From IMG/VR virus record IMGVR_UViG_3300029258_002750, positions 1 through 64,000 of that record: 64,000 nt of DNA, one strand, 5' to 3'. The stretch's first letter is position 1; every line of letters begins with the position of its first letter. The position numbers were made by a program, and so were the translations under genes. Under the pieces are notes generated by a model that saw nothing but the letters and a program-made list of their open reading frames with translations, was not told the DNA's origin and searched no databases. Shown in pieces: positions 6,823 through 19,016 of the stretch.

Positions 6823-6874
6823 GGGTCAAGCTCTCTACCCAGAGCCTAGCTCGTCCTGTTGGATAAATCTAGGT

Positions 6875-8352: not shown

Positions 8353-8375
8353 CGAGTCTCGCGGGGGTGTGTGAG

Positions 8376-8530: not shown

Positions 8531-8540
8531 TTGTTCTAGT

Positions 8541-8610
8541 GGACCGACGTTGTGGGGTCAGCGAGACGAAACAGCTCCAAAAGATGTAGTCCCGCCGGAG
8601 CATTCGGTCC
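8541..8610 (-). ncRNA. short Y-like RNA
   Basis: GGACCGA-ATGC...GGACTACATC...ACAACG-TCGGTCC; same terminal module as the permuted tRNA mimics. Confidence 0.6.
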
Positions 8611-8641
8611 TATGACGACCGTGGGGCTTTCACCCACGGCC

Positions 8642-8771
8642 GCCGGATCGGCGACGCGAGAGCTTGCGTTCACGCCGCCGGGTTGCTGCGGCCCCTCTTG
8701 GCCCTGCCGAGTCCAGGTAACCACCAAGGGGCCTGCCATTCACTGATGTACTCCCGTCAAGTTCATCCGGC
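8642..8771 (-). ncRNA. structured RNA, divergent member of the Y-like family (rod with central bubble)
   Basis: GCCGGAT/ATCCGGC closing stem, GACGGGAG/CTCTCGCGTC, GGGAGTACATC motif, apical GGCCCC/GGGGCC stem. Confidence 0.45.
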
Positions 8772-8802
8772 TGCTGGCCGACGTTGTAGACGACGAGAGG
8801 GA

Positions 8803-8876
8803 TAGCGCGGGCAGGATTTGAACCTGCGATCTCCGGGTTATGAGCCCAGCGTCATACCGAACTAGACTACCGCGCG
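8803..8876 (-). tRNA. tRNA-fMet(CAT), canonical elbow
   Basis: C1/T72 mismatch, GGG/CCC anticodon stem, CTCATAA loop, D-loop GG, T-loop TTCAAAT. Confidence 0.9.
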
Positions 8877-8945
8877 TCGTTGTGCAGGGAGAACAGAGTC
8901 CCTTTGTCCTGGTCGAGCCAGGCTTACGCGACCTGCACCGCGATT

Positions 8946-9300
8946 TGGAGCTGGCGAGAATCGAACTCGCGTCCTGTAACCTATCCACCCGCGCGTCTAC
9001 GTGCGTAGCTCGCTCTCCTTAGTCCCCTCGTCTGAGCGCGAGCGTCTCTGGCGAGCGGGCGCCTCTAGGGAGTGTTCTCGTCCTTCACCGGGCGAGGCCC
9101 CGGATCAGGTACCAGCCCATCTTGTGGCCCAGACCTTTCACCCCATGGGCGGGGGATCCAGCTGGGGGCGGCCTTTTAGGCTGCCAGGCGAACAGGTGCG
9201 TTGGCAACTATTCAGTTTCCAGGTTGTTTATAGAGGCCAACCTGGGACCTCTACACGCAACGCGAGCTTCACCGGCCCAGTCGATACCAGTGTCAGCCCC
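8946..9300 (-). ncRNA. ssrA: tmRNA, tag peptide (A)ANAPVRLAA
   Basis: 5' GGGGCTGACACTGGTATCGAC, 3' GCGAG-TTCGATT-CTCGC-CAGCTCC-A, G3:U70; resume GCC at 9205, TAA at 9176-9178. Confidence 0.95.
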
Positions 9301-9315
9301 GTGTGTTCGTGCCCA

Positions 9316-9329
9316 AGTTGTCAAAGAGC
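9316..9329 (-). promoter_or_regulatory. boxA-like antitermination site GCTCTTTGACAACT in tmRNA leader
   Basis: Resembles rrn boxA; near-identical copy at 16687-16701 before the tRNA array. Confidence 0.5.
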
Positions 9330-9420
9330 GGAGGAACGGACCGGACGCTTCTCATAAGGGGGAAAGTGGGGATTCGATAGGCGCTACCCGGTCCGCTTCT
9401 CCTTCTCACTCGCTGTCTTG

Positions 9421-9429
9421 GTTATACCC
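9421..9429 (-). promoter_or_regulatory. promoter -10 motif GGGTATAAC upstream of tmRNA
   Basis: Variant of the recurring GGGTAGAAC motif. Confidence 0.55.
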
Positions 9430-9457
9430 TGCGGCCGACAGCCGCAAGGAAGTTTCA

Positions 9458-9529
9458 TGGGTCCGCAGGGATTCGCACCCTGACCGCCTCGGGTAAAAGC
9501 CGAGCGTGCTCCTGTTACACCACGAACCC
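9458..9529 (-). tRNA. tRNA-Lys(TTT), A18/G55
   Basis: CTCGG-CTTTTAC-CCGAG; T-loop TGCGAAT. Confidence 0.9.
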
Positions 9530-9530
9530 G

Positions 9531-9600
9531 TGGTACCCCCGCCCGGAGTCGCACCGGGGTCGCCGGGTTTAGAAGACCTGGCCGCCTCTCTGCCGGGGGC
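9531..9600 (-). tRNA. tRNA-Arg(TCT), reduced D arm, encoded CCA
   Basis: Loop CTTCTAA; T-loop TGCGACT; GCCCCCG/CGGGGGT-ACCA. Confidence 0.7.
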
Positions 9601-9603
9601 AAA

Positions 9604-9674
9604 AGCGGGCACCGGGAATTGCACCCGGGTCATCGGGATGGAAGCCCGACGCTCTACTTCTAAGCTATGCCCGC
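9604..9674 (-). tRNA. tRNA-Gly(TCC)
   Basis: TCGGG-CTTCCAT-CCCGA; T-loop TGCAATT; U73. Confidence 0.9.
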
Positions 9675-9678
9675 GAGA

Positions 9679-9750
9679 TGACCCCGGTGGGGATCGCACC
9701 CACACCTTCGGCGTGAAAGACCGACATCCAGACTACTAGACCACGGGGCC
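9679..9750 (-). tRNA. tRNA-Glu(TTC)
   Basis: TCGGT-CTTTCAC-GCCGA; T-loop TGCGATC. Confidence 0.9.
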
Positions 9751-9836
9751 AGGTGGCCGAGCGGGAGGGCTCGGCCGGGGGCGACCGGAAGACCGGACGC
9801 ACTCCACCATCACAGACTCGCTCGCGCGAGTTGCGA

Positions 9837-9908
9837 TGGGCACGGTGAGAATCGCACTCACGACCTCTGCTACGTCAAAGCAGCGCTCTTCTACTGAGCT
9901 ACGCGCCC
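9837..9908 (-). tRNA. tRNA-Val(GAC)
   Basis: CTGCT-TTGACGT-AGCAG; T-loop TGCGATT. Confidence 0.9.
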
Positions 9909-9994
9909 CGGCAACCGCCCGGTCCGTCAGGACCGTATTCCACCTTGGACGGATGGTGCATCCCTTCATCTAAACACGGGTCTAAGAGGCGGCA

Positions 9995-10076
9995 CGGAAG
10001 GCGGAGGAGTTGCACCCCATCCCGAAGGACCATCCGGTTTCAAGCCGGTACTCGGCGCTGGCCGAGATCGCCTTCC
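9995..10076 (-). tRNA. tRNA-Ser(TGA)
   Basis: Loop CTTGAAA, long variable arm, G73; T-loop TGCAACT. Confidence 0.85.
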
Positions 10077-10081
10077 AGACA

Positions 10082-10154
10082 TGGAGCCTACGGGACTCGC
10101 ACCCGTGCCCTCCGACCTGCCAGATCGGCGCTCTCCTAACTGAGCTAAGGCCCC
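10082..10154 (-). tRNA. tRNA-Ala(GGC)
   Basis: G3:U70; CCGAT-CTGGCAG-GTCGG; T-loop TGCGAGT. Confidence 0.9.
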
Positions 10155-10158
10155 TCGA

Positions 10159-10230
10159 TGGAGCAGAAGGGAATTGCACCCTCAACCTCGGCGTTGCGAA
10201 CGCCGCGCTCTCCTATTGAGCTACTGCCCC
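10159..10230 (-). tRNA. tRNA-Ala(CGC)
   Basis: G3:U70; CGGCG-TTCGCAA-CGCCG; T-loop TGCAATT. Confidence 0.9.
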
Positions 10231-10709
10231 GTGTGTTCGTGTTCTCCGCAGTCGCCGCAGTCGTGATCGCAGTGGGGACACTTGCCCTCCTCCGAGCACT
10301 CGCCGCAGACCGTGGTGACGGTCGTCATGTCCGGGTACTCCCTGAGCATCTTCTCGGCTAGCTGCCGGATGGGCAGCCCCGGAACACTCGGGTCCGGCTC
10401 GGCAGCCTTGCCGCAGACCGAACACTTCGTGTTCTCCAGGTGTTTGGCGAGCGCGTCGATCTTCGCTGCGTCGATCTTCGCGAAGGCATCGTGCTCGAAC
10501 TGGAGGACAGCGACCTGCCCGGTTGAGTAGTTCTCGGCGACCGGGTAGTCGGTGCCGCCGCGACCACATCGTGCGCAGGCGCGCATCATCATCGGATCGA
10601 GCGGTCGCTCCGGCTTGACCTCGGTCTGCGTGTGCTGCACGACCACGATCATCCGGCCGACGGATGGCGCGTCCTCACAGAACGCGCACCAGACGGGCTC
10701 ATCAACCAC
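10221..10709 (-). CDS. Cys-rich multi Zn-finger-like protein embedded in tRNA array
   Basis: GGAGG SD + GTG; six CxxC pairs; stop TAG is nt 8-10 of tRNA-Ala(CGC). Confidence 0.7.
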   Translation of the reverse strand: MVDEPVWCAFCEDAPSVGRMIVVVQHTQTEVKPERPLDPMMMRACARCGRGGTDYPVAENYSTGQVAVLQFEHDAFAKIDAAKIDALAKHLENTKCSVCGKAAEPDPSVPGLPIRQLAEKMLREYPDMTTVTTVCGECSEEGKCPHCDHDCGDCGEHEHTGQ

Positions 10710-10722
10710 TACGACCTCCGAA

Positions 10723-10778
10723 TCGGGCACCCGGGATTCGCACCCGGAGTCTCTCCTGATGAGATGAGAGAGACAACC
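10723..10778 (-). pseudogene. tRNA remnant (T arm + 3' acceptor strand only)
   Basis: CCGGG-TGCGAAT-CCCGG-GTGCCCG-A with no matching 5' strand or D arm. Confidence 0.5.
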
Positions 10779-10781
10779 CAA

Positions 10782-10852
10782 TCGGGGAACCCGGAGTTGC
10801 ACCGAGATTACACCGTCCCGAACGGCGCGTGTTGCTGTTACACCATTCCCCG
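10782..10852 (-). tRNA. tRNA-Pro(CGG)
   Basis: CGCCG-TTCGGGA-CGGTG; T-loop TGCAACT. Confidence 0.9.
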
Positions 10853-11458
10853 TAGTTCGTCGATGTCCCGAATCTCGTCCACGACCGCAGCCAACCGCGC
10901 CCGCCGCTTCGCGCCGAACACACCGCGCTTGTCGTTCACGAAGGCGATCTTCCGCCTCGGGTCATCTTGAATGTCCTCGAACCTGACGATCATGTCGTCG
11001 ATTCCTCGTCGGGCGTGCGTCGAGTGCTCGATGATCAGATCATCGTCTGCGAAGTCCACAGCGCGCTCCCCGATCCACTCCTTCCGAAAGGTGCGGCCGA
11101 AGAGGCGCTCTAGCTTCCGCTTCACCGGCAACTCGTCCTGCCGATACGCTAGGCCAGCTTGCTTGAGGTTCGCACGAGTCGCGGTGAGACAGCCCTCGCG
11201 GTTGTTCTCCCACGCGGCTCGACCGCCTTGCTTGCCCCACGCACGGCGCTGCGCTTTGGTTCCGGCGATCTGGCCGGATGTTGGCGACGGCCGACGCACC
11301 GTGATCGCTTCTCGCTGCTTGGCCGAGAGCTTGATGTCTCTGACCATGTAGCGAATCGTGCTCTTGCCAAGCTCAAGTTCCTCGGCAATCTCGGTGAGCG
11401 ACGCGCCGTCCCGTCGAAGGCGTCTCGCTCGATCGCGGATCTCTTTCGGGTAAGCCAT
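10838..11458 (-). CDS. HTH + DUF559/Vsr-like putative homing endonuclease
   Basis: N-terminal HTH (GASLTEIAEELELGKSTI); FRKEWIGERAVDF....IIEH nuclease-like core; own GGGTAAGAT-N6-ATG promoter. Confidence 0.6.
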   Translation of the reverse strand: MAYPKEIRDRARRLRRDGASLTEIAEELELGKSTIRYMVRDIKLSAKQREAITVRRPSPTSGQIAGTKAQRRAWGKQGGRAAWENNREGCLTATRANLKQAGLAYRQDELPVKRKLERLFGRTFRKEWIGERAVDFADDDLIIEHSTHARRGIDDMIVRFEDIQDDPRRKIAFVNDKRGVFGAKRRARLAAVVDEIRDIDELRGMV

Positions 11459-11470
11459 ACGAGCATCTTA

Positions 11471-11525
11471 CCCACGCGACCTCTGCGATTACAAGAGCGC
11501 GCTGACTAGACTGCGCTACAGTCCG
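11471..11525 (-). pseudogene. truncated tRNA-Pro-like 5' half
   Basis: CGGACTG-TA-GCGCAGTCTAGTCAGCGC followed by a distorted anticodon arm; T arm replaced by the promoter of the downstream nuclease gene. Confidence 0.55.
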
Positions 11526-11530
11526 TTGAA

Positions 11531-11615
11531 CGGAACGCGGAGGACTTGCACCCCAGACCTTTCGGCCCCAGCCGGGTTCGAGCCGGTGCCCGCGCGCTTG
11601 TCGGGTTCGCGTTCC
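11531..11615 (-). tRNA. tRNA-Ser(CGA)
   Basis: Loop CTCGAAC, long variable arm, G73; T-loop TGCAAGT. Confidence 0.85.
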
Positions 11616-11703
11616 TTGGAGCAGCGCGCCTGGCGTCTCACCAGGAGACGCCGAAGCGCCCAGGGATACCGTTGCCGTACGACCGGCTCCCACGCCTGCA
11701 AGA

Positions 11704-11772
11704 TCCCGCAGGAGAGGCTTGCACTCTCTTGCTCGTCCTTATGAGAGACGGCCCACTCTACGTGTCTGCGGG
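11704..11772 (-). tRNA. tRNA-Met/Ile2(CAT), elongator type, poor D arm
   Basis: CCCGCAG/CTGCGGG-A; CGTCT-CTCATAA-GGACG; T-loop TGCAAGC. Confidence 0.7.
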
Positions 11773-11776
11773 TTGA

Positions 11777-11847
11777 AGCCCTAGCCCGGAGTCGCACCGG
11801 GGTCTCCTCCGTACCAAGGAGGTGTTCTGCTCTTGGACCACTAGGGC
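11777..11847 (-). tRNA. tRNA-Thr(GGT)
   Basis: CCTCC-TTGGTAC-GGAGG; T-loop TGCGACT. Confidence 0.9.
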
Positions 11848-11851
11848 AAGA

Positions 11852-11925
11852 TCAGGGCGGTGGGATTCGCACCCACGGTCTCGTGTCCCCCAGACACGCG
11901 CCTTACTAGACTAGGCCACGCCCTG
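11852..11925 (-). tRNA. tRNA-Pro(GGG)
   Basis: CGTGT-CTGGGGG-ACACG; T-loop TGCGAAT. Confidence 0.9.
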
Positions 11926-11929
11926 TTGA

Positions 11930-12001
11930 TACTCGCGCCGGGAATCGCACCCGGATCTCCTCTTTCGGAGAGAGGTATCCTATCTTTTGGACGACGCGAG
12001 C
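11930..12001 (-). tRNA. tRNA-Arg(CCG)
   Basis: CCTCT-CTCCGAA-AGAGG; T-loop TGCGATT. Confidence 0.9.
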
Positions 12002-12002
12002 T

Positions 12003-12079
12003 TGGTACTCCCGGCAGGATTCGCACCTGCGAAGACCTCTTTAGGAGAGAGGCGCCTTAGTCTGCTCGGCCACGGGAGC
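12003..12079 (-). tRNA. tRNA-Arg(CCT), encoded CCA
   Basis: CCTCT-CTCCTAA-AGAGG; T-loop TGCGAAT. Confidence 0.9.
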
Positions 12080-12082
12080 GCA

Positions 12083-12154
12083 AGCCCCGACTCGGAGTTG
12101 CACCGAGTTCTCCTCCGTACGAAAGAGGCACATCACTCTTTATGCTTTCGGGGC
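12083..12154 (-). tRNA. tRNA-Thr(CGT)
   Basis: CCTCT-TTCGTAC-GGAGG; T-loop TGCAACT. Confidence 0.85.
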
Positions 12155-12246
12155 AGGATCGGGCATGTCCCAAGAGCACCCGGCCCCTAGAAGGCCGGAC
12201 TCATGGGCGTGCATCGCAGCGCCTAGAACGCCGTGAGTCCCGATCA

Positions 12247-12330
12247 CGGAGGAGGGGGGAGTCGCACCCCAACCTGACGGACCACCCGGATTCCAGCCGG
12301 GGCTCGGAGCTACTCCGAGTTCTCTCCTCC
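12247..12330 (-). tRNA. tRNA-Ser(GGA)
   Basis: CCCGG-CTGGAAT-CCGGG, long variable arm, G73; T-loop TGCGACT. Confidence 0.85.
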
Positions 12331-12356
12331 AGCAGAGCTGGGTCAGCGCAGACCTG

Positions 12357-12926
12357 CTACGCGACCCGCTCCTTCGCCAGGAACGGCTCCCAGCTCGCCA
12401 GGACCACACCGCGCGGGACCCGCAGGCCGGGCTTCCAGCTCGGGGCGGCAGGCTTCTTCCTGGGCCGCATCTTGGCTTCCTTCGGCATCTTGTCGGCCTT
12501 GCGCGCGTTGCAGCTCTCGCAGGCCGCGACGCAGTTCTCCCAGGTCGTCGGCCCGCCCTTGGAGCGGGGCGTGACGTGGTCGATCGTGAGCTTCCTCGGG
12601 GGAAGCTCGGCGCCGCAGTACTGGCAGGTGTGCTCATCGCGCCTGTAGAGGTTCGGCCGGTTGAAGCTGACCCTCTGTGGTGGCCGCTCGCCGTACTTCT
12701 TGCAGACGACCACCTCGGGGGCCGGGATCGGCTGGCCCGCCGTCTTGATCATCCGATCGGTGTCGGCGCGCTCGATCCACTCCTCGAGCGTCATCAGGTA
12801 GAAGCTCGTCGGGCACATGATCGAGGCCATGTCCCTCATCACGTTGCAGAGGGCGACCTTGATCGGCAGGAACGTGACCGGCTGCCAGTTCCTATTCAGC
12901 ACCAGGCAAGGTTCGTCGATGATCAC
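12357..12926 (-). CDS. HNH endonuclease (McrA/HNH_5-like)
   Basis: CLVLNRNWQP N-terminus; RDEHTCQYCG...LTIDHVTPRSKGG...WENCVAACESCNARK. Confidence 0.9.
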   Translation of the reverse strand: MIIDEPCLVLNRNWQPVTFLPIKVALCNVMRDMASIMCPTSFYLMTLEEWIERADTDRMIKTAGQPIPAPEVVVCKKYGERPPQRVSFNRPNLYRRDEHTCQYCGAELPPRKLTIDHVTPRSKGGPTTWENCVAACESCNARKADKMPKEAKMRPRKKPAAPSWKPGLRVPRGVVLASWEPFLAKERVA

Positions 12927-12938
12927 GGCTCTCTCCGA

Positions 12939-13012
12939 TCAGGGAGGCGGGAGTCGCACCCGCATGATGTCCTGGTCCCAAACCAGGCGGCTTACTGTTA
13001 GCCCACTCCCTG
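12939..13012 (-). tRNA. tRNA-Pro(TGG)
   Basis: CCTGG-TTTGGGA-CCAGG; T-loop TGCGACT. Confidence 0.9.
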
Positions 13013-13024
13013 GTGGCTGGTTGG

Positions 13025-13129
13025 TGGCACGCAGACGAGGACTCGAACCCCGCAAAGACCATCGGCCTGGGCCGTTTCCTACGATAACCCGGAGCACCCT
13101 TCCCTCCCTCTCCGTTCCGAGCTTCGCGT
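13025..13129 (-). ncRNA. 105-nt aberrant tRNA-like RNA with encoded CCA
   Basis: 3' CGGGG-TTCGAGT-CCTCG-TCTGCGT-G-CCA pairing partly with 5' ACGCGAA; no normal anticodon loop. Confidence 0.5.
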
Positions 13130-13187
13130 AGGACTCCACTCGACACTGAGTTCGCTCGTGGCGCTCTGCCGATCTGCGCACCGATGA

Positions 13188-13270
13188 CGGAAGGCGGGAG
13201 ACTCGCACTCCAACCCGAAGGACGCACGCCTTAGCAGGGCGGCCCGGCTCGCTTGTCCGGTTCACCTTCC
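13188..13270 (-). tRNA. tRNA-Ser(GCT)
   Basis: Loop CTGCTAA, long variable arm, G73; T-loop TGCGAGT. Confidence 0.85.
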
Positions 13271-13825
13271 AGTGGTCTTGGGGTAGCCGAAGCGATCGAA
13301 GTCGTCGCCCCACTTCTCGACTACCATCCGCTCGATCTCCGGCGTGTACTGGCTCTGCCAGTCGGCCGTGATCGGGCTCTGCGGGACGATGTGCAGCCGC
13401 TCGTTGGCGACGAACGGCAGCTCGCTGAAGCTCGCCTGGAGCTGTTCGTAGCGGATCAGCTGGGCGGGCTCGATCTCTCCCAGCCGAGCTGACTGGGACT
13501 CGAAGCCGGACCCTGCGGTCCTCTCAACGAAGGCCCCGAAGTCGTCCGGCCTCGCGCGGACGAACTCGCCCAGCTCGTTGGGCCACCGGGACACCCAGTT
13601 CCAGCAGGAGACCATTCTGCTGAATGGGTTCCTCACGGTCGCGATCACGAGGTAGCTCTCGCACCCGGTCGGGATCCCGATCCGATGCGTGAGCATCCGA
13701 CCGTCCTGCTCGCCGCCGATGCAGCCGAACCTGTCGCGCAGCGTGTGGAACACGCAGCGGGTGCCGGTCCGCATGTTGGCGAGGAAGACGAAACGGTGCG
13801 CGTGCGAGACGTTCATCTCGCGCAT
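13262..13825 (-). CDS. sulfotransferase family 2-like protein
   Basis: FVFLANMRTGT (5'-PSB loop), ATVRNPFSRMVS (3'-PB), IRYEQL, DFDRFGY. Confidence 0.75.
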   Translation of the reverse strand: MREMNVSHAHRFVFLANMRTGTRCVFHTLRDRFGCIGGEQDGRMLTHRIGIPTGCESYLVIATVRNPFSRMVSCWNWVSRWPNELGEFVRARPDDFGAFVERTAGSGFESQSARLGEIEPAQLIRYEQLQASFSELPFVANERLHIVPQSPITADWQSQYTPEIERMVVEKWGDDFDRFGYPKTTGR

Positions 13826-13832
13826 CGTCGCA

Positions 13833-13906
13833 TAGGGCCACTGGGACTTGCACCCAGCGCCTCCGGCATATCAGACCGGCGCTCTACCTGCATGAGCTAT
13901 GACCCT
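13833..13906 (-). tRNA. tRNA-Ile(GAT)
   Basis: CCGGT-CTGATAT-GCCGG; T-loop TGCAAGT. Confidence 0.9.
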
Positions 13907-13910
13907 GTGA

Positions 13911-13983
13911 TGGTCCCGGTCGGATTTGCACCGACAACCTCTTGGCCCTCGACCAAGCGCCTCTGCTGTTGGGCTACGAGACC
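13911..13983 (-). tRNA. tRNA-Leu(GAG), short variable loop
   Basis: CTTGG-TCGAGGG-CCAAG (C33); D arm GCCCAACAGCAGAGGC; T-loop TGCAAAT. Confidence 0.85.
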
Positions 13984-13987
13984 GGAC

Positions 13988-14052
13988 GCTCGACGTTGTT
14001 GGTGCCGCAGACGTGCATGTGTTCAGGATGTAGTCCACGACGGCATTCGAGC
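13988..14052 (-). ncRNA. short Y-like RNA
   Basis: GCTCGA-ATGCC...GGACTACATC...ACAACG-TCGAGC. Confidence 0.6.
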
Positions 14053-14055
14053 TGA

Positions 14056-14128
14056 TGATCCTGGTCGGATTTGCACCGACAACCTCCGCATCCTGAGTGC
14101 GGCGCCTCTGCTGTTGGGCTACAGGATC
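14056..14128 (-). tRNA. tRNA-Leu(CAG), short variable loop
   Basis: CCGCA-CTCAGGA-TGCGG; T-loop TGCAAAT. Confidence 0.9.
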
Positions 14129-14131
14129 GTA

Positions 14132-14203
14132 TGTCCCGGGAGGGATTTGCACCCTCAACTCTGGTGTTTGAGACCAGCGGCGTTGCTATTAGCCTACCGG
14201 GAC
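14132..14203 (-). tRNA. tRNA-Leu(CAA), short variable loop
   Basis: CTGGT-CTCAAAC-ACCAG; T-loop TGCAAAT. Confidence 0.9.
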
Positions 14204-14224
14204 TCTTCCGATGTTCTTTCCGCA

Positions 14225-14301
14225 GAACGTCGGTGTCTGACTGTTGCAGTTGGGGCAGAGGAAGCACCAGACCAGTGCCTCTGCTGTTGGGCTAGCGGAG
14301 C
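14225..14301 (-). pseudogene. degenerate tRNA (Leu-type 5' half)
   Basis: GCTCCGC-TA-GCCCAACAGCAGAGGC intact; anticodon and T arms decayed. Confidence 0.5.
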
Positions 14302-14378
14302 TGGTAGGGCGCCTGGGAATCGCACCCAGCTTGGAAAGGGTTATAAGCACCTCCGCGACACCTAGCCGCCCGCGCCCC
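14302..14378 (-). tRNA. tRNA-Ile(TAT), encoded CCA
   Basis: GGGGCGC/GCGCCCT-ACCA; loop CTTATAA on a bulged stem; T-loop TGCGATT. Confidence 0.75.
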
Positions 14379-14381
14379 TCA

Positions 14382-14455
14382 TGCCCCCGGTGGGAGTTGC
14401 ACCCACAATCTCTCGGTCCGTAGCCGAGCGCCTTAGTCTGTTTGGCCACGGGGGT
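14382..14455 (-). tRNA. tRNA-Arg(ACG)
   Basis: CTCGG-CTACGGA-CCGAG; T-loop TGCAACT. Confidence 0.9.
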
Positions 14456-14459
14456 TGGA

Positions 14460-14531
14460 TACCCGGACTGCGAGTCGCACGCAGAACTCGAGGTCCACAA
14501 CCTCGCGTGATCACTGTTTCACCATCCGAGC
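14460..14531 (-). tRNA. tRNA-His(GTG), no G-1, A73
   Basis: CGAGG-TTGTGGA-CCTCG; T-loop TGCGACT. Confidence 0.85.
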
Positions 14532-14535
14532 TGGA

Positions 14536-14606
14536 AGCGGCCTGCGGGAGTTGCACCCGCGCGAAGAGCTTGGGAAGCTCTCATGCTGCTGCTACATCAA
14601 GGCCGC
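14536..14606 (-). tRNA. tRNA-Gly(CCC)
   Basis: AGAGC-TTCCCAA-GCTCT; T-loop TGCAACT. Confidence 0.9.
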
Positions 14607-14671
14607 GTGCGCCGGATACCCAGGGGGGCTCCCCAGGCCAGCCGGTCCTTGCCGTGCTGCTTGCGATCCGA

Positions 14672-14754
14672 TCCGCCTGCGTGGATTCGCACCACGTTGC
14701 TCCGAAGAGACCCGGGTTACAGCCGGGCACGACCACTAGGTCGACCCCAGACGG
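14672..14754 (-). tRNA. tRNA-Tyr(GTA), long variable arm, C1:G72
   Basis: CCGTCTG/CAGGCGG-A; CCCGG-CTGTAAC-CCGGG; T-loop TGCGAAT. Confidence 0.85.
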
Positions 14755-14758
14755 TTGA

Positions 14759-14829
14759 AGCGGCCTACGAGAATCGCACTCGTGACTACAGCATGGCAAG
14801 CTGTCGCGTTACTACTACGCCAAGGCCGC
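14759..14829 (-). tRNA. tRNA-Gly(GCC)
   Basis: ACAGC-TTGCCAT-GCTGT; T-loop TGCGATT. Confidence 0.9.
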
Positions 14830-14838
14830 GTTGTAAGG

Positions 14839-15017
14839 GGCTCTCGCTGGGAATTGAACCCAGATCCTCCACACCACGATCGCTTCATAGCCGACCGAAG
14901 CCATCCACGGTCGCGCGGTCTGTGCGGCGTGCTTGCCATCCGACGAGCGTCAGAAACCGGGGCTGCTCGGCCCGGCACTGCGGTAGCTCGTGGACGACCC
15001 CATACACCATCGAGAGC
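14839..15017 (-). ncRNA. about 180-nt tRNA-like RNA with large internal domain
   Basis: Perfect 7-bp acceptor GCTCTCG/CGAGAGC and T arm CTGGG-TTCAATT-CCCAG enclosing about 140 nt of hairpins. Confidence 0.55.
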
Positions 15018-15028
15018 ATGTGTTCAGC

Positions 15029-15099
15029 TGGGCCATGAGGGAGTCGCACCCCCGCCTTCTCGGTGTGAACGAGATGCGCTTCTGTTACACCAATGGCCC
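15029..15099 (-). tRNA. tRNA-Val(CAC)
   Basis: TCTCG-TTCACAC-CGAGA; T-loop TGCGACT. Confidence 0.9.
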
Positions 15100-15104
15100 G
15101 GGTT

Positions 15105-15233
15105 CCGACGACGTGAAGGCGACGAGAGGGTTATCTAGCCACCACGGCCCTCTCCACGAAAGCGGAGAGACTGGGAGTCGAACCCAGATCGATCGAGTTA
15201 CAGTCGATGTACTCCCATCAGGGCATTCGTCGG
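15105..15233 (-). ncRNA. YrlA-type Y RNA #2 (circularly permuted tRNA mimic)
   Basis: CCGACGA-ATG...GATGGGAG; hairpin ATCGA-CTGTAAC-TCGAT; T arm CTGGG-TTCGACT-CCCAG; looped acceptor TCTCTCC-GCTTTCGT-GGAGAGG; CTCTCGTC...ACG-TCGTCGG. Confidence 0.8.
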
Positions 15234-15234
15234 A

Positions 15235-15306
15235 TGGAGTAGGTGGGAGTTGCACCCACGACCCTCGGTTTGCAGGACCGACGCTCTCCTACTGAGCTAC
15301 TACCCC
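15235..15306 (-). tRNA. tRNA-Ala(TGC)
   Basis: G3:U70; TCGGT-CCTGCAA-ACCGA; T-loop TGCAACT. Confidence 0.9.
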
Positions 15307-15310
15307 AAGA

Positions 15311-15382
15311 CGGCCCCCGTGGGATTCGCACCCACAACCTCACGGTCCAAAGCCGCGCGCTCTGCTGTTGAGCTAGGGGGCT
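15311..15382 (-). tRNA. tRNA-Gln(TTG)
   Basis: CGCGG-CTTTGGA-CCGTG; G73; T-loop TGCGAAT. Confidence 0.9.
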
Positions 15383-15624
15383 AGGTTCTTCTCGCGCTCG
15401 CGCGCTCGAATGATCGCAAGCTCGACCTTGCGCTCGCGGGCGGTCTTCTTCCCGCGCTTCTTCGCCAGGCACGTGTAGCAGTGCCTCGGCGGTTGGTGGC
15501 CGCTCCGCGCGGCCCGTTCGATGTGCTTCAGCTTGATCGGCCGATCGCACGCCCTGCATCGTCGGCCGCTCTCTTCAGCGAAGTGCGGCCAGTGGTAGTC
15601 CTTCTCTCGCTTGTTGGTGGCGAT
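15373..15624 (-). CDS. small basic CxxC/CxxC protein with apparent ATC start
   Basis: AGGAGG-act-ATC then ATNKREKDYHWPHF..CRAC..CYTC..; 83 aa; absent from ORF track because of its start codon. Confidence 0.55.
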   Translation of the reverse strand: MATNKREKDYHWPHFAEESGRRCRACDRPIKLKHIERAARSGHQPPRHCYTCLAKKRGKKTARERKVELAIIRAREREKNLAP

Positions 15625-15643
15625 AGTCCTCCTGGCTGGCGGA

Positions 15644-15716
15644 TAGCGTCGCCCGGATTCGAATCGGGATCCTCACAGGTTATGAGCCTGGCGAGCTACC
15701 GTTGCTCTACGACGCG
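15644..15716 (-). tRNA. tRNA-fMet-like(CAT) #2, canonical elbow
   Basis: C1/T72 mismatch, GAGC/GCTC D stem with GG, T-loop TTCGAAT. Confidence 0.85.
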
Positions 15717-15717
15717 A

Positions 15718-15791
15718 CGGCCCCCCTGGGATTTGCACCCAGAAACCTCCGGTTCCAGAGACCGGCGCTCTACTGATTGAGCTAGGGGGCT
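15718..15791 (-). tRNA. tRNA-Gln(CTG)
   Basis: CCGGT-CTCTGGA-ACCGG; T-loop TGCAAAT. Confidence 0.9.
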
Positions 15792-15795
15792 AGGC

Positions 15796-15860
15796 GCCCG
15801 ACGTTGGTGGTTGCCGTGTCGAGCACATGTTGGAGATGTAGACACAGCTGGCATTCGGAC
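15796..15860 (-). ncRNA. short Y-like RNA
   Basis: GTCCGA-ATGCC...CTACATC...CCAACG-TCGGGC. Confidence 0.6.
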
Positions 15861-15862
15861 GA

Positions 15863-15934
15863 CAGGCCGCCTGGGAATCGCACCCAGCAGACGGCAGGTT
15901 TTGGAGACCCGCCCGCGTACCTAGCGCGCGACCT
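15863..15934 (-). tRNA. tRNA-Trp(CCA)
   Basis: Loop CTCCAAA, G73; T-loop TGCGATT. Confidence 0.85.
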
Positions 15935-15937
15935 AGA

Positions 15938-16009
15938 AGTGCCGCCCCGGAGTTGCACCGGGCTCTTCGGTGTTGCAGACCGACGGATGAACTGATCTCC
16001 CTGCGGCAC
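15938..16009 (-). tRNA. tRNA-Cys(GCA)
   Basis: TCGGT-CTGCAAC-ACCGA; U73; T-loop TGCAACT. Confidence 0.85.
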
Positions 16010-16010
16010 G

Positions 16011-16085
16011 TGGCTTACCCCCTGGGATTCGCACCCAGAACATCCTGGTTAACAGCCAGGCACTCTACTATTGAGCTAGGGGTAA
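16011..16085 (-). tRNA. tRNA-Asn(GTT), encoded CCA
   Basis: CCTGG-CTGTTAA-CCAGG; T-loop TGCGAAT. Confidence 0.9.
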
Positions 16086-16157
16086 CTCAGCCCCTCGGAT
16101 TTGCACCGAGACCTCCTCCGGTAACAGCGGAGCGCTCTACTACTAAGCTAGGACTGA
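16086..16157 (-). tRNA. tRNA-Asn(GTT) #2
   Basis: CTCCG-CTGTTAC-CGGAG; G73; T-loop TGCAAAT. Confidence 0.85.
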
Positions 16158-16229
16158 TGACCCGGACGGGAATCGCACCCGCACTCTTCGGCGTGAGAGA
16201 CCGACGTGTTTCTGTTACACCACCGGGCC
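16158..16229 (-). tRNA. tRNA-Glu(CTC)
   Basis: TCGGT-CTCTCAC-GCCGA; T-loop TGCGATT. Confidence 0.9.
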
Positions 16230-16232
16230 AGA

Positions 16233-16304
16233 TGGGCCTGCTCGGATTTGCACCGAGAACATCCTGGTTAAGAGCCAGGCGTGATCCTGTTTCACCACAG
16301 ACCC
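16233..16304 (-). tRNA. tRNA-Lys(CTT)
   Basis: CCTGG-CTCTTAA-CCAGG; T-loop TGCAAAT. Confidence 0.9.
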
Positions 16305-16308
16305 AAGC

Positions 16309-16380
16309 GGGGAGATTCGGGAGTTGCACCCTCATTCACCGGCACGTGCTGCCGCTCGTGACGGATACCTGCTCGGTCCC
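16309..16380 (-). pseudogene. degenerate tRNA remnant
   Basis: T-loop TGCAACT and CGGCA/TGCCG hairpin with 5-nt loop; acceptor stem broken. Confidence 0.4.
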
Positions 16381-16385
16381 CAAGA

Positions 16386-16460
16386 CGGCCGCGACGGGAT
16401 TCGCACCCGCGATCTCCACCGTGACAGGGTGGCATGTTGACTTGGCTACACCACGCGACC
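16386..16460 (-). tRNA. tRNA-Asp(GTC)
   Basis: CCACC-CTGTCAC-GGTGG; G73; T-loop TGCGAAT. Confidence 0.9.
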
Positions 16461-16465
16461 AGGTT

Positions 16466-16603
16466 GACGTCCGAGTGAGGGAACCGCGAGTAGGTGCTCT
16501 TCCACTTGAGCTAGTTCGCCCCGAGTGGCGAACCCTGGAGTCGAACCAGGAACATCCCGCTGATGAAGCGAAAGTGCGTGTAGGATTCTCTCGGCCGGAC
16601 GCC
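16466..16603 (-). ncRNA. YrlA-type Y RNA #3 (circularly permuted tRNA mimic)
   Basis: GGCGTCCG/CGGACGTC closing stem; T arm CCTGG-TTCGACT-CCAGG; looped acceptor GTTCGCC-ACTCGG-GGCGAAC; D arm GCTCAAGTGGAAGAGC. Confidence 0.8.
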
Positions 16604-16605
16604 GA

Positions 16606-16677
16606 TGGGACCCCTCGGAATTGCACCGAGACCTTCCGGTTTTCAGCCGGGTGCTCTACTGGTTGAGCTAAGGCCCC
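16606..16677 (-). tRNA. tRNA-Phe(GAA)
   Basis: Loop CTGAAAA; D arm GCTCAACCAGTAGAGC; T-loop TGCAATT. Confidence 0.9.
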
Positions 16678-16686
16678 AAGACAGCG

Positions 16687-16701
16687 AGTTGTCAATGAGC
16701 A
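16687..16701 (-). promoter_or_regulatory. boxA-like site TGCTCATTGACAACT in tRNA-array leader
   Basis: Matches 9316-9329 copy except for one base. Confidence 0.5.
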
Positions 16702-16811
16702 GTGCGTTGACGCGCCGATCCGACTAGCTAGGTCAGGGGCAACGCCCTCGTCTTGTGCTTCCCTGGACTGAGGAGGCCGCGATTCCTTTCCACGATTCTC
16801 CTTTTGTCCTA

Positions 16812-16879
16812 AGCCCTTGCTCGGAGTCGCACCGAGACTCGCGGAGTACAAGACCGCGATCCGTCTCACGGACAAGGGC
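16812..16879 (-). tRNA. tRNA-Thr(TGT), short D arm
   Basis: GCCCTTG/CAAGGGC-T; loop CTTGTAC; T-loop TGCGACT. Confidence 0.75.
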
Positions 16880-16892
16880 GGGTGTCGGTCCG

Positions 16893-17108
16893 CTACCCGG
16901 CGGGCCGAAGGCGCGCGGTGCGCGACCGAGAACCTCGGTCGGCGCGCCTACGCGCCGCTTGTATTCTCGGGATGATCCGTGTCGAGAAGTTCGTGCGTTC
17001 CTGAAGCGATACGGCCTCCGAGCGCGTCATCGGTGACGTGACGCACTGGATGTTGCCCGCGTCGTCCACGCGGGCCAGACACACGGTCTTCGGCTCGCGG
17101 CGCTTCAT
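16893..17108 (-). CDS. hypothetical protein
   Basis: 71-aa ORF between Ro60 operon and array. Confidence 0.45.
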   Translation of the reverse strand: MKRREPKTVCLARVDDAGNIQCVTSPMTRSEAVSLQERTNFSTRIIPRIQAARRRADRGSRSRTARLRPAG

Positions 17109-17339: not shown

Positions 17340-19016
17340 TTACGCCTCCGGCTGCTCGAGGCTAATCGCCTCGATCTCTGCGACCCAGGCGTCCACGTCG
17401 TGCGTGTCGCCCCGGGCGAACCGATCGACCGTGCTCCAGATCGCGTCCGAGAACCCGCCGATGTTGAGGATCTCGTCGGGCGCGCTCGGCGCCTGGGTGG
17501 TCGTGTTCGGCGAGATGTCGATGCAGACCATCCGCGCCCCGCCCGCCTTCTTATGGAGCTGGCGGAACTCGGACATGAGCTGGGTCCCTCGCCCGTAGCG
17601 CAGGCTCCCGCGCGAGTCGACCCACGACTCGTTGTCGCTGACGATGACCACGAGCTTGAACTCGTGCGCCCTCTTCAGGCCGTTCAGGTGACGGAGGGCC
17701 AGCGAGAGGTTGGTCCCGCCGCCGCCCATCTGACCCAGCTTGATGGCGTTCGTCATGACCGTGTCGCGGGGGTTGATGAGCCGCGTGCTGTGGACGCTGG
17801 TGTCCACGGGAATCGCGATCGAGCCCTTGTTCCGCCGAAGCACGGTGGCCGCCATGAGACCAGCCACATCCACGCAGCGGACCTTGGTCGTCGAGCCCTT
17901 CCGCACGCCCGTGACCGGGCTGTGCATCGAGCCGCTGACGTCCACGATCACGGCCGTGGGCACACCGAAGCTGGGGACACTCTCGGTCGCGACCTCCATC
18001 GCGTCCTGAAGGGAGTCCCTGACCTCGAAGGGCAGGTCGATGGGCTCCGGCGCGCCGCTCTCCATCGCGTAGCGACGGTAGTACTGCGCGTACCGCTCGT
18101 AGATCGGGTCTGGGTGCTTGCCCGAGTTCAGGTACGCGACGAGCAGCTGGTAGGGGAAGACCCGGGCCTTCGCCAGCTCCTCGCGGTCGGCGATCCGAGC
18201 TGCGACCAGCTCGGCAATGCCGGGCTCGTCGAAGACGCTGTGGCGCGCTGCCGTGTTGAGGTTCTTGATTGTGAACTGGTAGCCGCCGTTGCGGACGATC
18301 TGCGCCCAGTGGTGCGGCTTGAGGGGCAGCGAGGTGAGCTGCCGGAAGTCGACGTCAGGGACCTCGGCCGACTCGCCGCGCTTGAACGCCTCGTAGTGCT
18401 GGACGATGCCGGGGAGCTTCGCCGCGTCGTGCTCGCGACCGAGGATGTAGCCGATGAGGGCCTTCTGCTCCTCGTCGACCGCCTTCGGGTGGGCGAGCCG
18501 GATGACGTCGGCCAGGCTCGGGTTCTTCCCAACCGTCGCGCGGAAGAGCGCGCGGGCCGACCGCTGCCGGATCCACTTGTTGACGAGCCGCTTGAGGCCC
18601 GACCCCATCGACTTCCGGCCGAGGACGCCGGACCGGACCATCTGGACCAGGTTGCGGACCATCTTGCCGTTGTCGATGACGCGGGTGAAGACCAGGTCGC
18701 ACAGGCGCGGGTCGGCCTTCGACAGCATGACCATAAGAGCCGCAGGCATGTCCTTCATCCCGCCCTTCTGGCGCGCGTAGACCGCGCACTTGGCGAGGAA
18801 GACGGGCTCGACCTGGTCGGCCGCCTGGCGAATGCCCTCGAGCTGGTCGACGGGGGAGGTGTAGTAGGTCGGGTTGAACGTGCCGGTGCACGCCAGCTGC
18901 GCGAGCGCGTGCTTCGGCCCAAACTGGTAGGCCGTGCCTCCGGCCTTGTTCGTGGTGTCGGTTGCGGGAACCGAGCGCCCTGCGGACGCACTCTGGAAGA
19001 CGGCCTTGTTCGCCAC
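17340..19016 (-). CDS. Ro60/TROVE-domain RNA-binding protein (Rsr-like)
   Basis: N.AGG.AY...PKHALAQLACTGTF..TYY; SLADVIRLAHPK; ARVFPYQLLVAY; VWA DVSGSM, GGGTNLS, IVSDNESW; LNIGGFSD. Confidence 0.95.
   Translation of the reverse strand: MANKAVFQSASAGRSVPATDTTNKAGGTAYQFGPKHALAQLACTGTFNPTYYTSPVDQLEGIRQAADQVEPVFLAKCAVYARQKGGMKDMPAALMVMLSKADPRLCDLVFTRVIDNGKMVRNLVQMVRSGVLGRKSMGSGLKRLVNKWIRQRSARALFRATVGKNPSLADVIRLAHPKAVDEEQKALIGYILGREHDAAKLPGIVQHYEAFKRGESAEVPDVDFRQLTSLPLKPHHWAQIVRNGGYQFTIKNLNTAARHSVFDEPGIAELVAARIADREELAKARVFPYQLLVAYLNSGKHPDPIYERYAQYYRRYAMESGAPEPIDLPFEVRDSLQDAMEVATESVPSFGVPTAVIVDVSGSMHSPVTGVRKGSTTKVRCVDVAGLMAATVLRRNKGSIAIPVDTSVHSTRLINPRDTVMTNAIKLGQMGGGGTNLSLALRHLNGLKRAHEFKLVVIVSDNESWVDSRGSLRYGRGTQLMSEFRQLHKKAGGARMVCIDISPNTTTQAPSAPDEILNIGGFSDAIWSTVDRFARGDTHDVDAWVAEIEAISLEQPEA

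What the first reader, a model, noticed from the sequence alone, without database searches (positions are those of the whole stretch)
14839..15017. About 180-nt tRNA-like RNA: perfect acceptor and T arm around a 140-nt unknown domain
Seen: 5' GCUCUCG pairs perfectly with 3' CGAGAGC-C; canonical T arm CUGGG-UUCAAUU-CCCAG; a stemless D-like loop (AUGGUGUAUGGGGUCG) as in the tmRNA tRNA-like domain; interior hairpins CCACGAGC/GCUCGUCGG and GACCG/CGGUC. It is too short for tmRNA (already present at 8946), lacks G3:U70 and has no anticodon arm. Inference: a new tRNA-like ncRNA, or an intron-containing tRNA.
Basis: partly seen in the sequence, partly recalled or inferred. Interest (0 to 1): 0.6.

Follow-up and report, generated by a model that had tools for sequence, protein, structure and literature searches.

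The report
Orphan oversized tRNA-like RNA in phage
A 179-base gene inside a giant phage's tRNA cluster has genuine tRNA ends and elbow but about 140 unrelated structured bases where the anticodon arm should be, so it is most likely a non-decoding tRNA mimic whose partner and function remain unknown.

Summary
On the minus strand, 15017..14839 has a perfect 7-bp acceptor stem, a canonical T arm (CUGGG-UUCAAUU-CCCAG) and a G-rich D-like loop. It sits 11 nt after tRNA-Val and 9 nt before tRNA-Gly in a roughly 45-gene tRNA array of a 275-kb phage.

It is not tmRNA, not a standard tRNA, and fails Rfam. An ARAGORN call of "tRNA-Thr(CGU) with a 108-nt intron" is weak: 7.7% of interior-shuffled controls get a similar call, and the phage already has tRNA-Thr(CGU).

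The array starts about 460 nt downstream of a Ro60/Rsr gene, with el1 2.3 kb from it, and also holds at least six Y RNAs. Three of these are tRNA-like YrlA types, one only 5 nt upstream of the neighbouring tRNA-Val. However, el1 lacks the Y-RNA signature (GAAU...UACA) in three model tests.

No homologue was found anywhere. The closest relatives lack it at the same tRNA junction, and all recovered copies are identical, so conservation cannot be tested.

Other Rsr phages carry oversized tRNA-like genes. At least five are tRNA/YrlA hybrids that score as both tRNA and YrlA. These are the closest analogues.

Best reading (about 0.45): a tRNA-processed, non-decoding tRNA mimic. Rivals are an insert-bearing tRNA (pseudo)gene, or a remnant.

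The parts
15011..15017 (-). Acceptor-stem 5' strand GCUCUCG; predicted RNase P cleavage 5' of G15017
   Evidence: Starts 11 nt after the 3' end of tRNA-Val(CAC).
14839..14846 (-). Acceptor-stem 3' strand CGAGAGC (14846-14840) plus discriminator C (14839). Followed by CCU, so CCA is not fully encoded.
   Evidence: Ends 9 nt before tRNA-Gly(GCC).
14847..14863 (-). T arm CUGGG-UUCAAUU-CCCAG, with the canonical U54 U55 C56 A57 A58 loop
   Evidence: The R2 model matches only this part (13.5 bits).
14993..15010 (-). A8 U9 connector and D-like segment GGUG-UAUGGGGU-CGUC, with GG at the register of G18 G19
   Evidence: In this genome GG-containing D loops go with UUC T loops.
14926..14930 (-). ACGCC, 3' strand of the long-range D-like stem with GGUGU (15008-15004)
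   Evidence: MFE and pair probabilities 0.82-0.89.
14935..14998 (-). 64-nt hairpin (13-bp stem with a bulged C, apical CCGGG/CCCGG hairpin) emerging from the D-like loop
   Evidence: z = -3.7, 0 of 200 shuffles, for 14934-14998; helix map.
14870..14922 (-). Branched second domain at the anticodon-arm position (8-bp stem with a G.G mismatch, then hairpins GACCG../..CGGUC and GCU-AUGA-AGC). No anticodon loop.
   Evidence: MFE. Its stability is not significant on its own (z = -1.4).
14864..14869 (-). Variable-loop-like linker GAGGAU. Its last U could form the 15:48 tertiary (Levitt) pair with A15.
   Evidence: Sequence reading; inference only.
15104..15231 (-). Context: canonical YrlA-type Y RNA (GACGAAUG motif, T arm, closed 7-bp acceptor-like hairpin, D region), one gene upstream
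   Evidence: 62.1 bits, full length, with R2, which was built from other phages only; HMM hit; fold.
17340..19016 (-). Context: Ro60/Rsr orthologue (TROVE and vWA_Ro60 domains), same strand, upstream of the array
   Evidence: thousands of Ro60 homologues.

Best explanation
el1 is a phage gene for a non-decoding tRNA mimic. It is transcribed with the Rsr-proximal tRNA/Y-RNA array. It is cut out like a tRNA: RNase P cleaves 5' of G15017, 3' trimming stops after C14839, and the CCA end is then completed. This works because it keeps the 12-bp acceptor/T-arm coaxial helix and a canonical T loop that can dock on a GG-containing D-like loop.

The anticodon arm is replaced by about 140 nt of extra helices: a stable 64-nt hairpin growing out of the D-like loop, and a branched arm. 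It therefore cannot read codons. Instead it presents a tRNA elbow and acceptor end to tRNA-binding proteins while carrying a lineage-specific extra module.

By analogy with the YrlA Y RNAs beside it, the likeliest partner is the phage Rsr/Ro60 system or another tRNA-recognising factor, with el1 acting as scaffold or decoy.

Shown: the shell, its placement, the stable hairpin and the genomic context. Inferred: transcription, processing, the elbow contact and any partner.
For: - **Shell.** A perfect acceptor stem and T arm with pair probabilities >=0.94. Chance of the acceptor pairing is 0.17-1.7%.
- **Placement.** Spaced like a gene in the array: 11 nt and 9 nt from the flanking tRNAs. No terminator-like site on that strand between rsr and the element.
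- **Fold.** The MFE fold is a four-way cloverleaf with a 2-nt 8/9 connector and the T arm stacked directly on the acceptor. The 65-nt hairpin has z = -3.7.
- **Elbow.** Array tRNAs in this genome have T loop UGC and mostly 'AG' D loops, while both UUC-loop tRNAs in that tally have GG. The tmRNA and YrlA-type RNAs also carry UUC. el1 has UUC plus GGGG, consistent with a canonical elbow.
- **Context.** Rsr lies 2.3 kb upstream on the same strand. Five Y RNAs in the window are detected by a motif HMM built only from other phages; R2, also built only from other phages, matches two of them and a sixth, YrlA-type RNA at 16462-16606.
- **Analogues.** Oversized tRNA-like genes with open acceptor ends recur on the rsr strand in other Rsr phages. 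Five score both as tRNA (44-55 bits with a ~60-nt insert) and/or as YrlA 5' module plus T arm (33-48 bits, full length).
- **Precedent.** M. smegmatis YrlA is cut by RNase P and receives CCA in vivo (PMC4201824).
Against: - No homologue exists in any collection searched, so there is no covariation or conservation evidence.
- The nearest relatives (85% and 61% Rsr identity) have tRNA-Val directly abutting tRNA-Gly.
- el1 lacks the Y-RNA signature in every test.
- Rfam's tRNA model does not accept it even with a local insert, unlike the hybrids.
- Whole-molecule fold z is only -1.8.
- There are no expression data.
Confidence: 0.45

Rival explanations
1. An insert-bearing tRNA gene. A tRNA (Thr-CGU-like) carries a ~108-nt insertion at the 5' side of the anticodon loop. 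Either the insert is removed to give a working tRNA, or, more likely, the gene is a disabled paralogue (pseudogene) that is still processed at its ends.
For: The acceptor begins GCUC...GAGC, like the tRNA-Thr(CGU) of relative L002. In the tRNA/YrlA hybrids of other phages the insert sits at the same place, inside the anticodon arm.
Against: 7.7% of interior-shuffled controls are called too, and with strict spacers the real sequence is not called. The model has no nucleotide 26, a D stem with one G-C pair, and G37 where ANN-reading tRNAs have A37. It is 19.8 kcal/mol worse than the MFE. A normal tRNA-Thr(CGU) is already present at 12083-12154. No Rfam tRNA or group I intron hit. No known bacterial or phage mechanism removes a 108-nt non-group-I insert.
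Confidence: 0.22
2. A non-functional remnant. An orphan tRNA 3' end (T arm plus acceptor strand) was left by rearrangement of the array, and the upstream 7-mer and interior hairpins carry no function.
For: The element is lineage-specific and absent from all relatives. Partial tRNA pieces do occur in these arrays, for example a stray T arm plus acceptor strand at L005:3923-3958 and a tRNA 5' half at window 14204-14301. Whole-fold z is only -1.8.
Against: The perfect acceptor partner sits exactly at the 5' edge of the gap (0.17% by chance). The hairpin is significantly stable. GG/UUC co-occur, against the genome's usual AG/UGC. A second RNA of similar build (13025-13179, with an encoded GCCA end) lies in the same array and is kept in a 98%-identical strain, with its only difference in a hairpin loop.
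Confidence: 0.15
3. A divergent Y RNA proper: a circularly permuted YrlA whose Rsr-binding site lies in one of the interior helices, so that it binds phage Rsr directly.
For: Genomic context. The architecture is identical in outline to the tRNA/YrlA hybrids. Approximate look-alikes of the motif exist by eye: GUCGGAUGG with CACA 13 nt later, and GACCGUGGAUGGC with CUAU 9 nt later.
Against: The two invariant blocks GAAU and UACA are both mutated. R2 aligns only the T arm. The motif HMM gives nothing at E<=1000 while recovering five true Y RNAs. Lineage-specific HMMs of Y-RNA ends give nothing. The short-Y model R1 gives <=2.4 bits. The shared 8-12-mers with the neighbouring YrlA are within chance expectation.
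Confidence: 0.12

Closest known systems
YrlA-type bacterial/phage Y RNAs (Chen et al. 2014, PMC4201824; Wang et al. 2018, bioRxiv 10.1101/312249)
   Same: Non-decoding tRNA mimics with T arm, D region and acceptor-like stem, encoded next to Ro60/Rsr, including in phages. M. smegmatis YrlA is cut by RNase P and gains CCA. Three canonical YrlA genes lie in the same array as el1.
   Different: YrlA has its ends in the Rsr-binding stem and a closed acceptor-like hairpin, whereas el1 has open tRNA-type ends. el1 lacks the GNCGAAN0-1G/GAAU...UACA signature in all model tests. el1 is larger and carries unrelated helices.
tRNA/YrlA hybrid genes found here in other Rsr phages (L061:13340-13472, L057:9822-9951, L092:7469-7592, L036:11870-11998 and 12168-12335)
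   Same: Open 7-bp acceptor, T arm, length 124-168 nt, a large insert replacing or interrupting the anticodon arm, on the rsr strand among tRNAs and Y RNAs.
   Different: The hybrids have a D arm and an anticodon stem and (except L036:12168-12335) pass Rfam's tRNA threshold, and their insert carries the YrlA signature. el1 passes neither test.
tmRNA tRNA-like domain
   Same: Acceptor stem plus T arm closing a large interior; A at position 8; G-rich D-like loop.
   Different: No G3:U70, no tag frame recognised, no Rfam or ARAGORN tmRNA hit. It is half the size, and the phage has its own complete tmRNA at 8943-9300.
Stable RNAs of unknown function in phage tRNA clusters (T4 species 1 and 2 RNAs; recalled from memory, not tested)
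   Same: Non-tRNA RNAs of 120-140 nt encoded inside a phage tRNA cluster and matured by the tRNA-processing enzymes.
   Different: No sequence relation was tested or expected. The T4 context has no Rsr.

Membership tests
tRNA (Rfam RF00005 / ARAGORN) | 7-bp acceptor stem with the T arm stacked on it, and a T loop of the form UUCRANN | tested here: met
tRNA (Rfam RF00005 / ARAGORN) | Local 3-4-bp D arm and a 5-bp anticodon stem with a 7-nt loop at standard spacing; model score above threshold | tested here: not met
   Not called by ARAGORN at default settings. No RF00005 hit even at E<=10 over 461 nt, whereas the hybrids score 44-55 bits.
Intron-containing tRNA | A credible tRNA once a defined intron is removed, and a known intron type | tested here: inconclusive
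Not called with strict spacers. No group I intron hit. Fold is +19.8 kcal/mol.
tmRNA | G3:U70 in the acceptor, a tag reading frame, pseudoknots; RF00023 or ARAGORN tmRNA call | tested here: not met
   U3-A70. No RF00023 hit on the element. ARAGORN tmRNA mode at 80% threshold finds nothing.
YrlA / bacterial Y RNA | Encoded near a Ro60/Rsr gene | tested here: met
   Rsr at 17340-19016, same strand, 2.3 kb upstream, with tRNAs and Y RNAs in between.
YrlA / bacterial Y RNA | Rsr-recognition motif GNCGAAN0-1G followed by YUAY (here invariant GAAU...UACA) upstream of the T arm | tested here: not met
   R2 aligns only the T arm, 13.5 bits. The motif HMM finds nothing at E<=1000. R1 gives <=2.4 bits.
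YrlA / bacterial Y RNA | Topology: RNA ends in the Rsr-binding stem, with the acceptor-like stem closed by a loop | tested here: not met
   el1 has open acceptor ends, in contrast with the neighbouring YrlA.
YrlA / bacterial Y RNA | Physical binding to Rsr | not testable with these tools
   Needs co-immunoprecipitation or a gel-shift assay.

The most novel reading that the evidence does not exclude
el1, its sibling at 13025-13179, and the oversized tRNA-like genes of other Rsr phages are members of an undescribed class. These are tRNA-topology mimics: open, RNase P/CCA-competent acceptor ends, an intact elbow, and a large module grafted into the D loop or anticodon arm. Phages would make them from their tRNA arrays to recruit or decoy tRNA-binding machinery, such as Rsr/PNPase-type RNPs, or host tRNA-targeting nucleases and modification enzymes. 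The tRNA/YrlA hybrids are the motif-bearing end of that class, and el1 is a motif-less variant with a different cargo.
Probability: 0.3. Interest if true: 0.7.

Novelty: new variant of a known kind. Interest (0 to 1): 0.5.

Why it matters
Y RNAs that mimic tRNA are known, but what their tRNA-like domain is for is still open. Large phages that combine big tRNA arrays, Rsr and several Y RNAs are a natural test bed.

An end-matured tRNA mimic with an open, possibly CCA-tailed acceptor and a foreign cargo would show that phages diversify the tRNA scaffold beyond decoding. The tRNA/YrlA hybrids seen in passing suggest how YrlA could arise from tRNA genes by insertion and permutation.

If el1 is only a decayed tRNA, it is a caution about orphan single-genome RNA calls.

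Tried and rejected
**Known families and near relatives**
- Rfam at gathering and E<=10 thresholds: nothing beyond a chance-level mascRNA-like hit on the T arm.
- tmRNA reading rejected: no G3:U70 and no ARAGORN tmRNA call. An in-frame GCA...UGA 15-codon string seen by eye has no tag-like end.
- The argument that tRNA-Thr(CGU) is 'missing' is void: it is at 12083-12154.

**Homologue searches (all negative)**
- BLAST of the region against 50,697 phage records, near and distant modes: no match.
- Exact-pattern scans of IMG/VR with three el1 segments: self only.
- Genome contigs pattern scan: two chance hits that are not tRNAs.
- BLAST against all fetched loci: none.
- Other assemblies of the same phage are 100% identical, so uninformative.
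- The sister-strain contigs stop short of el1 (L012/L013, L016).

**Y-RNA module inside el1**
- The idea came from shared strings: UCC(G)ACGA / ACG(C)UCGUCGGA with the neighbouring YrlA, and GUCGUCC with a short Y RNA.
- It was rejected by the short-Y model R1, the YrlA model R2, the motif HMM and the end HMMs. The number of shared 8-mers expected by chance is about 0.3-0.7.

**Other**
- Archaeal bulge-helix-bulge intron motif at the ARAGORN junctions: none seen by inspection.
- MAFFT alignment of the oversized tRNA-like genes (A4) misaligned the 5' ends, so it was not used for pair counts.
- Pfam scan of neighbouring ORFs found no RNA ligase, CCA-adding enzyme or RtcB near the array.

Full report
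**Where it is.** The window is part of IMGVR_UViG_3300029258_002750, a 275-kb phage contig. Its closest cultured relative by the Rsr protein is Myxococcus phage Mx1, at 43% identity. The minus strand between about 16880 and 6525 carries a tRNA array. ARAGORN finds 36 tRNAs plus a tmRNA there. Rfam adds tRNA-Thr(CGU) at 12083-12154, and a lower threshold or inspection adds Trp, Ile(UAU), Arg(UCU) and several Ser genes. The finding lies between tRNA-Val(CAC) (15099-15029) and tRNA-Gly(GCC) (14829-14759).

**The observation.** Read on the minus strand, 15017..14839 is a 179-nt RNA.
- Its first seven bases, GCUCUCG, pair perfectly with CGAGAGC at 14846-14840, followed by C.
- Directly upstream of that 3' strand is CUGGG-UUCAAUU-CCCAG, a textbook T arm.
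- In the Boltzmann ensemble these twelve pairs have probabilities of 0.94-1.00.
- Shuffling the 165-nt gap gives a perfect partner somewhere in 1.7% of trials, and at the very start of the gap (where it is) in 0.17%.
- The spacers to the neighbouring tRNAs are 11 and 9 nt.
- No terminator-like site lies on this strand between rsr and the element. One promoter-like site lies just downstream of rsr.

The shell is therefore real and is placed like a gene of the array.

**Interior.** The MFE fold (-82.5 kcal/mol) is a four-way cloverleaf.
- The acceptor is followed by a 2-nt connector (A8 U9).
- A 5-bp stem GGUGU/ACGCC (probability 0.82-0.89) encloses a loop that reads AUGGG ... AAGC.
- From that loop a 64-nt hairpin emerges, with a 13-bp stem, one bulged C and an apical CCGGG/CCCGG hairpin.
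- Next comes a branched 53-nt arm at the anticodon position, then the linker GAGGAU, then the T arm.
- The 65-nt hairpin is significantly stable (z = -3.7, 0 of 200 shuffles). The second arm (z = -1.4) and the whole molecule (z = -1.8) are not.
- A local D arm (GGUG-UAUGGGGU-CGUC, with G18 G19 in register) costs +13.6 kcal/mol.

A genome-internal observation supports a real elbow. Almost all array tRNAs here have the unusual T loop UGCRANN (G at position 55) together with 'AG' rather than 'GG' in the D loop. The tmRNA, the YrlA-type RNAs and the few UUC tRNAs keep a canonical T loop, and both UUC tRNAs tallied have GG. el1 has UUC and GGGG.

**What it is not.**
- *tmRNA.* The pair is U3-A70, there is no tmRNA call, and the phage has a complete tmRNA of its own.
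- *Standard tRNA.* There is no ARAGORN call at default settings and no RF00005 hit even at E<=10.
- *Intron-containing tRNA.* ARAGORN with introns allowed reports tRNA-Thr(CGU) with a 108-nt insert at the 5' side of the anticodon loop. However:
  - 77 of 1000 controls with a shuffled interior are called as well;
  - with strict spacers the real sequence is not called;
  - the model lacks nucleotide 26, has G37, and is 19.8 kcal/mol worse than the MFE;
  - the phage already has tRNA-Thr(CGU) at the position syntenic with its relative;
  - 108 nt is too short for a group I intron, and none is detected.

The ORF 17340-19016 on the same strand is a Ro60/Rsr orthologue with TROVE and vWA_Ro60 domains, and has thousands of Ro60 homologues. 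Bacterial and phage Rsr genes are accompanied by Y RNAs. The YrlA class contains a tRNA-like domain (T arm, closed acceptor-like hairpin, D arm) and a 5' motif GNCGAAN0-1G followed by YUAY (PMC4201824).

The segment 15231-15104, one gene upstream of el1, is such a YrlA:
- it reads GACGAAUG ... GUACAUC ... an anticodon-arm-like hairpin, a T arm, UCUCUCC-loop-GGAGAGG, then a D region;
- it scores 62 bits, full length, with a model (R2) built from 34 YrlA 5' halves of other phages only.

Further Y RNAs lie at 8372-8536 and 16462-16606 (YrlA type) and at 15791-15867, 13983-14060 and 8537-8617 (short type). The short type has covariation in its terminal stem across three phage lineages. An HMM of the motif alone recovers five of these at E 0.003-0.014.

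**Is el1 a Y RNA?** By eye it shares short strings with its neighbours. Every objective test was negative:
- R1 gives <=2.4 bits;
- R2 aligns only the T arm, 13.5 bits, like ordinary tRNAs;
- the motif HMM finds nothing at E<=1000;
- lineage-specific HMMs of Y-RNA ends find nothing.

The invariant GAAU and UACA blocks are absent. Membership in YrlA is therefore not established, and I do not file el1 there.

**Relatives.** The same phage assembled from at least four other samples is 100% identical over 10 kb. The next relative (85% Rsr identity; L002/L100/L101) has Ala-Val-Gly tRNAs abutting, with neither el1 nor the neighbouring YrlA. A 61% relative (L005) also has Val abutting Gly. Contigs of a sister strain 93-98% identical end before el1. 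No similar sequence exists in the phage records, IMG/VR, the species-representative genomes, or about 100 Rsr neighbourhoods. Conservation and covariation therefore cannot be assessed. The element is a recent, lineage-specific gain.

**Analogues elsewhere.** I scanned 1.7 Mb of Rsr neighbourhoods for orphan T arms whose following 7 nt pair with a 7-mer 90-320 nt upstream. This gave 25 hits, all on the rsr strand.
- *Hybrids.* Several are unmistakable oversized tRNA-like genes with textbook D arms. L061:13340-13472, L057:9822-9951, L092:7469-7592 and L036:11870-11998 pass Rfam's tRNA threshold (44-55 bits) with an insert of roughly 60 nt in the anticodon arm (65 nt in L061). Their insert plus T arm matches the YrlA model full length at 33-48 bits; L036:12168-12335 does too (42 bits). 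These are tRNA/YrlA hybrids, in effect circularly permuted YrlAs with open acceptor ends. I found no description of them.
- *Motif-less forms.* L024:16886-17002 and L027:16328-16463 carry a hairpin inside the D loop. L043:3441-3579 has a GNRA-capped 'anticodon' stem. These have no Y motif.
- *Sibling.* Within the window, 13025-13179 is a second RNA of similar outline (acceptor, UUC T arm, encoded GCCA). It is kept in the sister strain with one change, in a hairpin loop.

el1 shares the outline of this group but passes neither the tRNA nor the YrlA model.

**Most likely mechanism.** el1 is excised from the array transcript by the tRNA-end enzymes, because the acceptor/T-arm minihelix is the shared substrate determinant of RNase P, RNase Z and the CCA-adding enzyme (established knowledge; precedent for a Y RNA in PMC4201824). 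It folds with a tRNA-type elbow and carries a non-tRNA cargo of two helical domains instead of an anticodon arm. It therefore acts as a tRNA mimic (scaffold or decoy), not as a decoder. The partner is unknown. Rsr or another tRNA-recognising factor is the best guess from context.

My probabilities are:
- about 0.45 for a functional tRNA mimic;
- 0.22 for an insert-bearing tRNA (pseudo)gene;
- 0.15 for a remnant;

**Verdict.** The feature is real and well delimited, the tRNA-like reading is right, and the intron reading is weak. It is a new variant within the known theme of tRNA mimics in Rsr loci, but it is an orphan without comparative support. Interest is moderate, and is raised by the recurrent oversized tRNA-like genes and tRNA/YrlA hybrids found along the way.

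Noticed in passing
window 17340-19016 (-); 15104-15231, 8372-8536, 16462-16606 (-); 15791-15867, 13983-14060, 8537-8617 (-): The tRNA array is headed by a Ro60/Rsr gene and holds at least six Y RNAs: three YrlA-type with tRNA-like domains and three short ~76-nt ones. The short ones are conserved, with compensatory changes in the terminal stem, in relatives L002 and L006, and in L016.
   Followed up: yes
L061:13340-13472; L057:9822-9951; L092:7469-7592; L036:11870-11998 and 12168-12335: tRNA/YrlA hybrid genes in other Rsr phages. All have open 7-bp acceptor ends, a D arm and a T arm (textbook UAGCUC...GAGC D arms in L061, L057 and L092). Four pass Rfam's tRNA threshold with an insert of roughly 60 nt, and all five match the YrlA 5'-module model full length. 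In effect they are circularly permuted YrlA. I found no description in the literature searched.
   Followed up: partly
window 13025-13179 (-): A second oversized tRNA-like RNA (155 nt): acceptor GCGCAGA/UCUGCGU, U8, T arm CGGGG-UUCGAGU-CCUCG, and an encoded GCCA end. It is kept in a 98%-identical strain (L016), with its only change in a hairpin loop, and is absent from L002's contig.
   Followed up: partly
window 6500-16900 (-), all array tRNAs; also L002, L005, L036: Nearly all tRNAs of the array have T loop UGCRANN (G instead of the universal U55) together with 'AG' instead of 'GG' in the D loop, suggesting an A18:G55 elbow pair. The tmRNA, the YrlA-type Y RNAs, el1, el3 and three tRNAs (Leu-UAA, Met at 8803-8876, Tyr at 28222-28298) keep UUC, and the two UUC tRNAs tallied also have GG. 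Mx1 tRNAs appear to use UUC, judging from the few T loops seen there.
   Followed up: partly
L024:16886-17002; L027:16328-16463; L031:20724-20858; L043:3441-3579; L032:9394-9513 = L041:7637-7756; L067:3260-3375: More oversized tRNA-like genes without the Y motif. L024 and L027 carry a hairpin inserted in the D loop, with similar flanks (AAGUA...GAAGG) and different stem sequences. L027 and L031 have 6-nt 'anticodon' loops. L043 has a GNRA-capped stem.
   Followed up: no
window 12083-12154, 15863-15934, 14302-14378, 9531-9610, 11531-11615 (-); by eye about 9994-10077, 13189-13277, 11700-11776, 16810-16880 (-): tRNA genes missed by ARAGORN at default settings. Called by Rfam or at a lower threshold: Thr(CGU), Trp(CCA), Ile(UAU), Arg(UCU) and Ser(CGA). 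By inspection only: Ser(UGA), Ser(GCU), a CAU tRNA and Thr(UGU). Coordinates of the last four are approximate.
   Followed up: partly
L005:3923-3958; window 14204-14301 (-): Stray tRNA pieces in these arrays: an isolated T arm plus Leu-type acceptor 3' strand after tRNA-Leu(UAA) in L005, and what looks like a tRNA 5' half after tRNA-Leu(CAA) in the window.
   Followed up: no
window 40799-43639 (+): The family A DNA polymerase gene has a weak (below-threshold) intein splicing-domain match around residues 496-571.
   Followed up: no
window 9085-9550 (-): ARAGORN's second, 'permuted' tmRNA call overlaps the true tmRNA and tRNA-Lys. It looks like an artefact of the adjacent tRNA.
   Followed up: no
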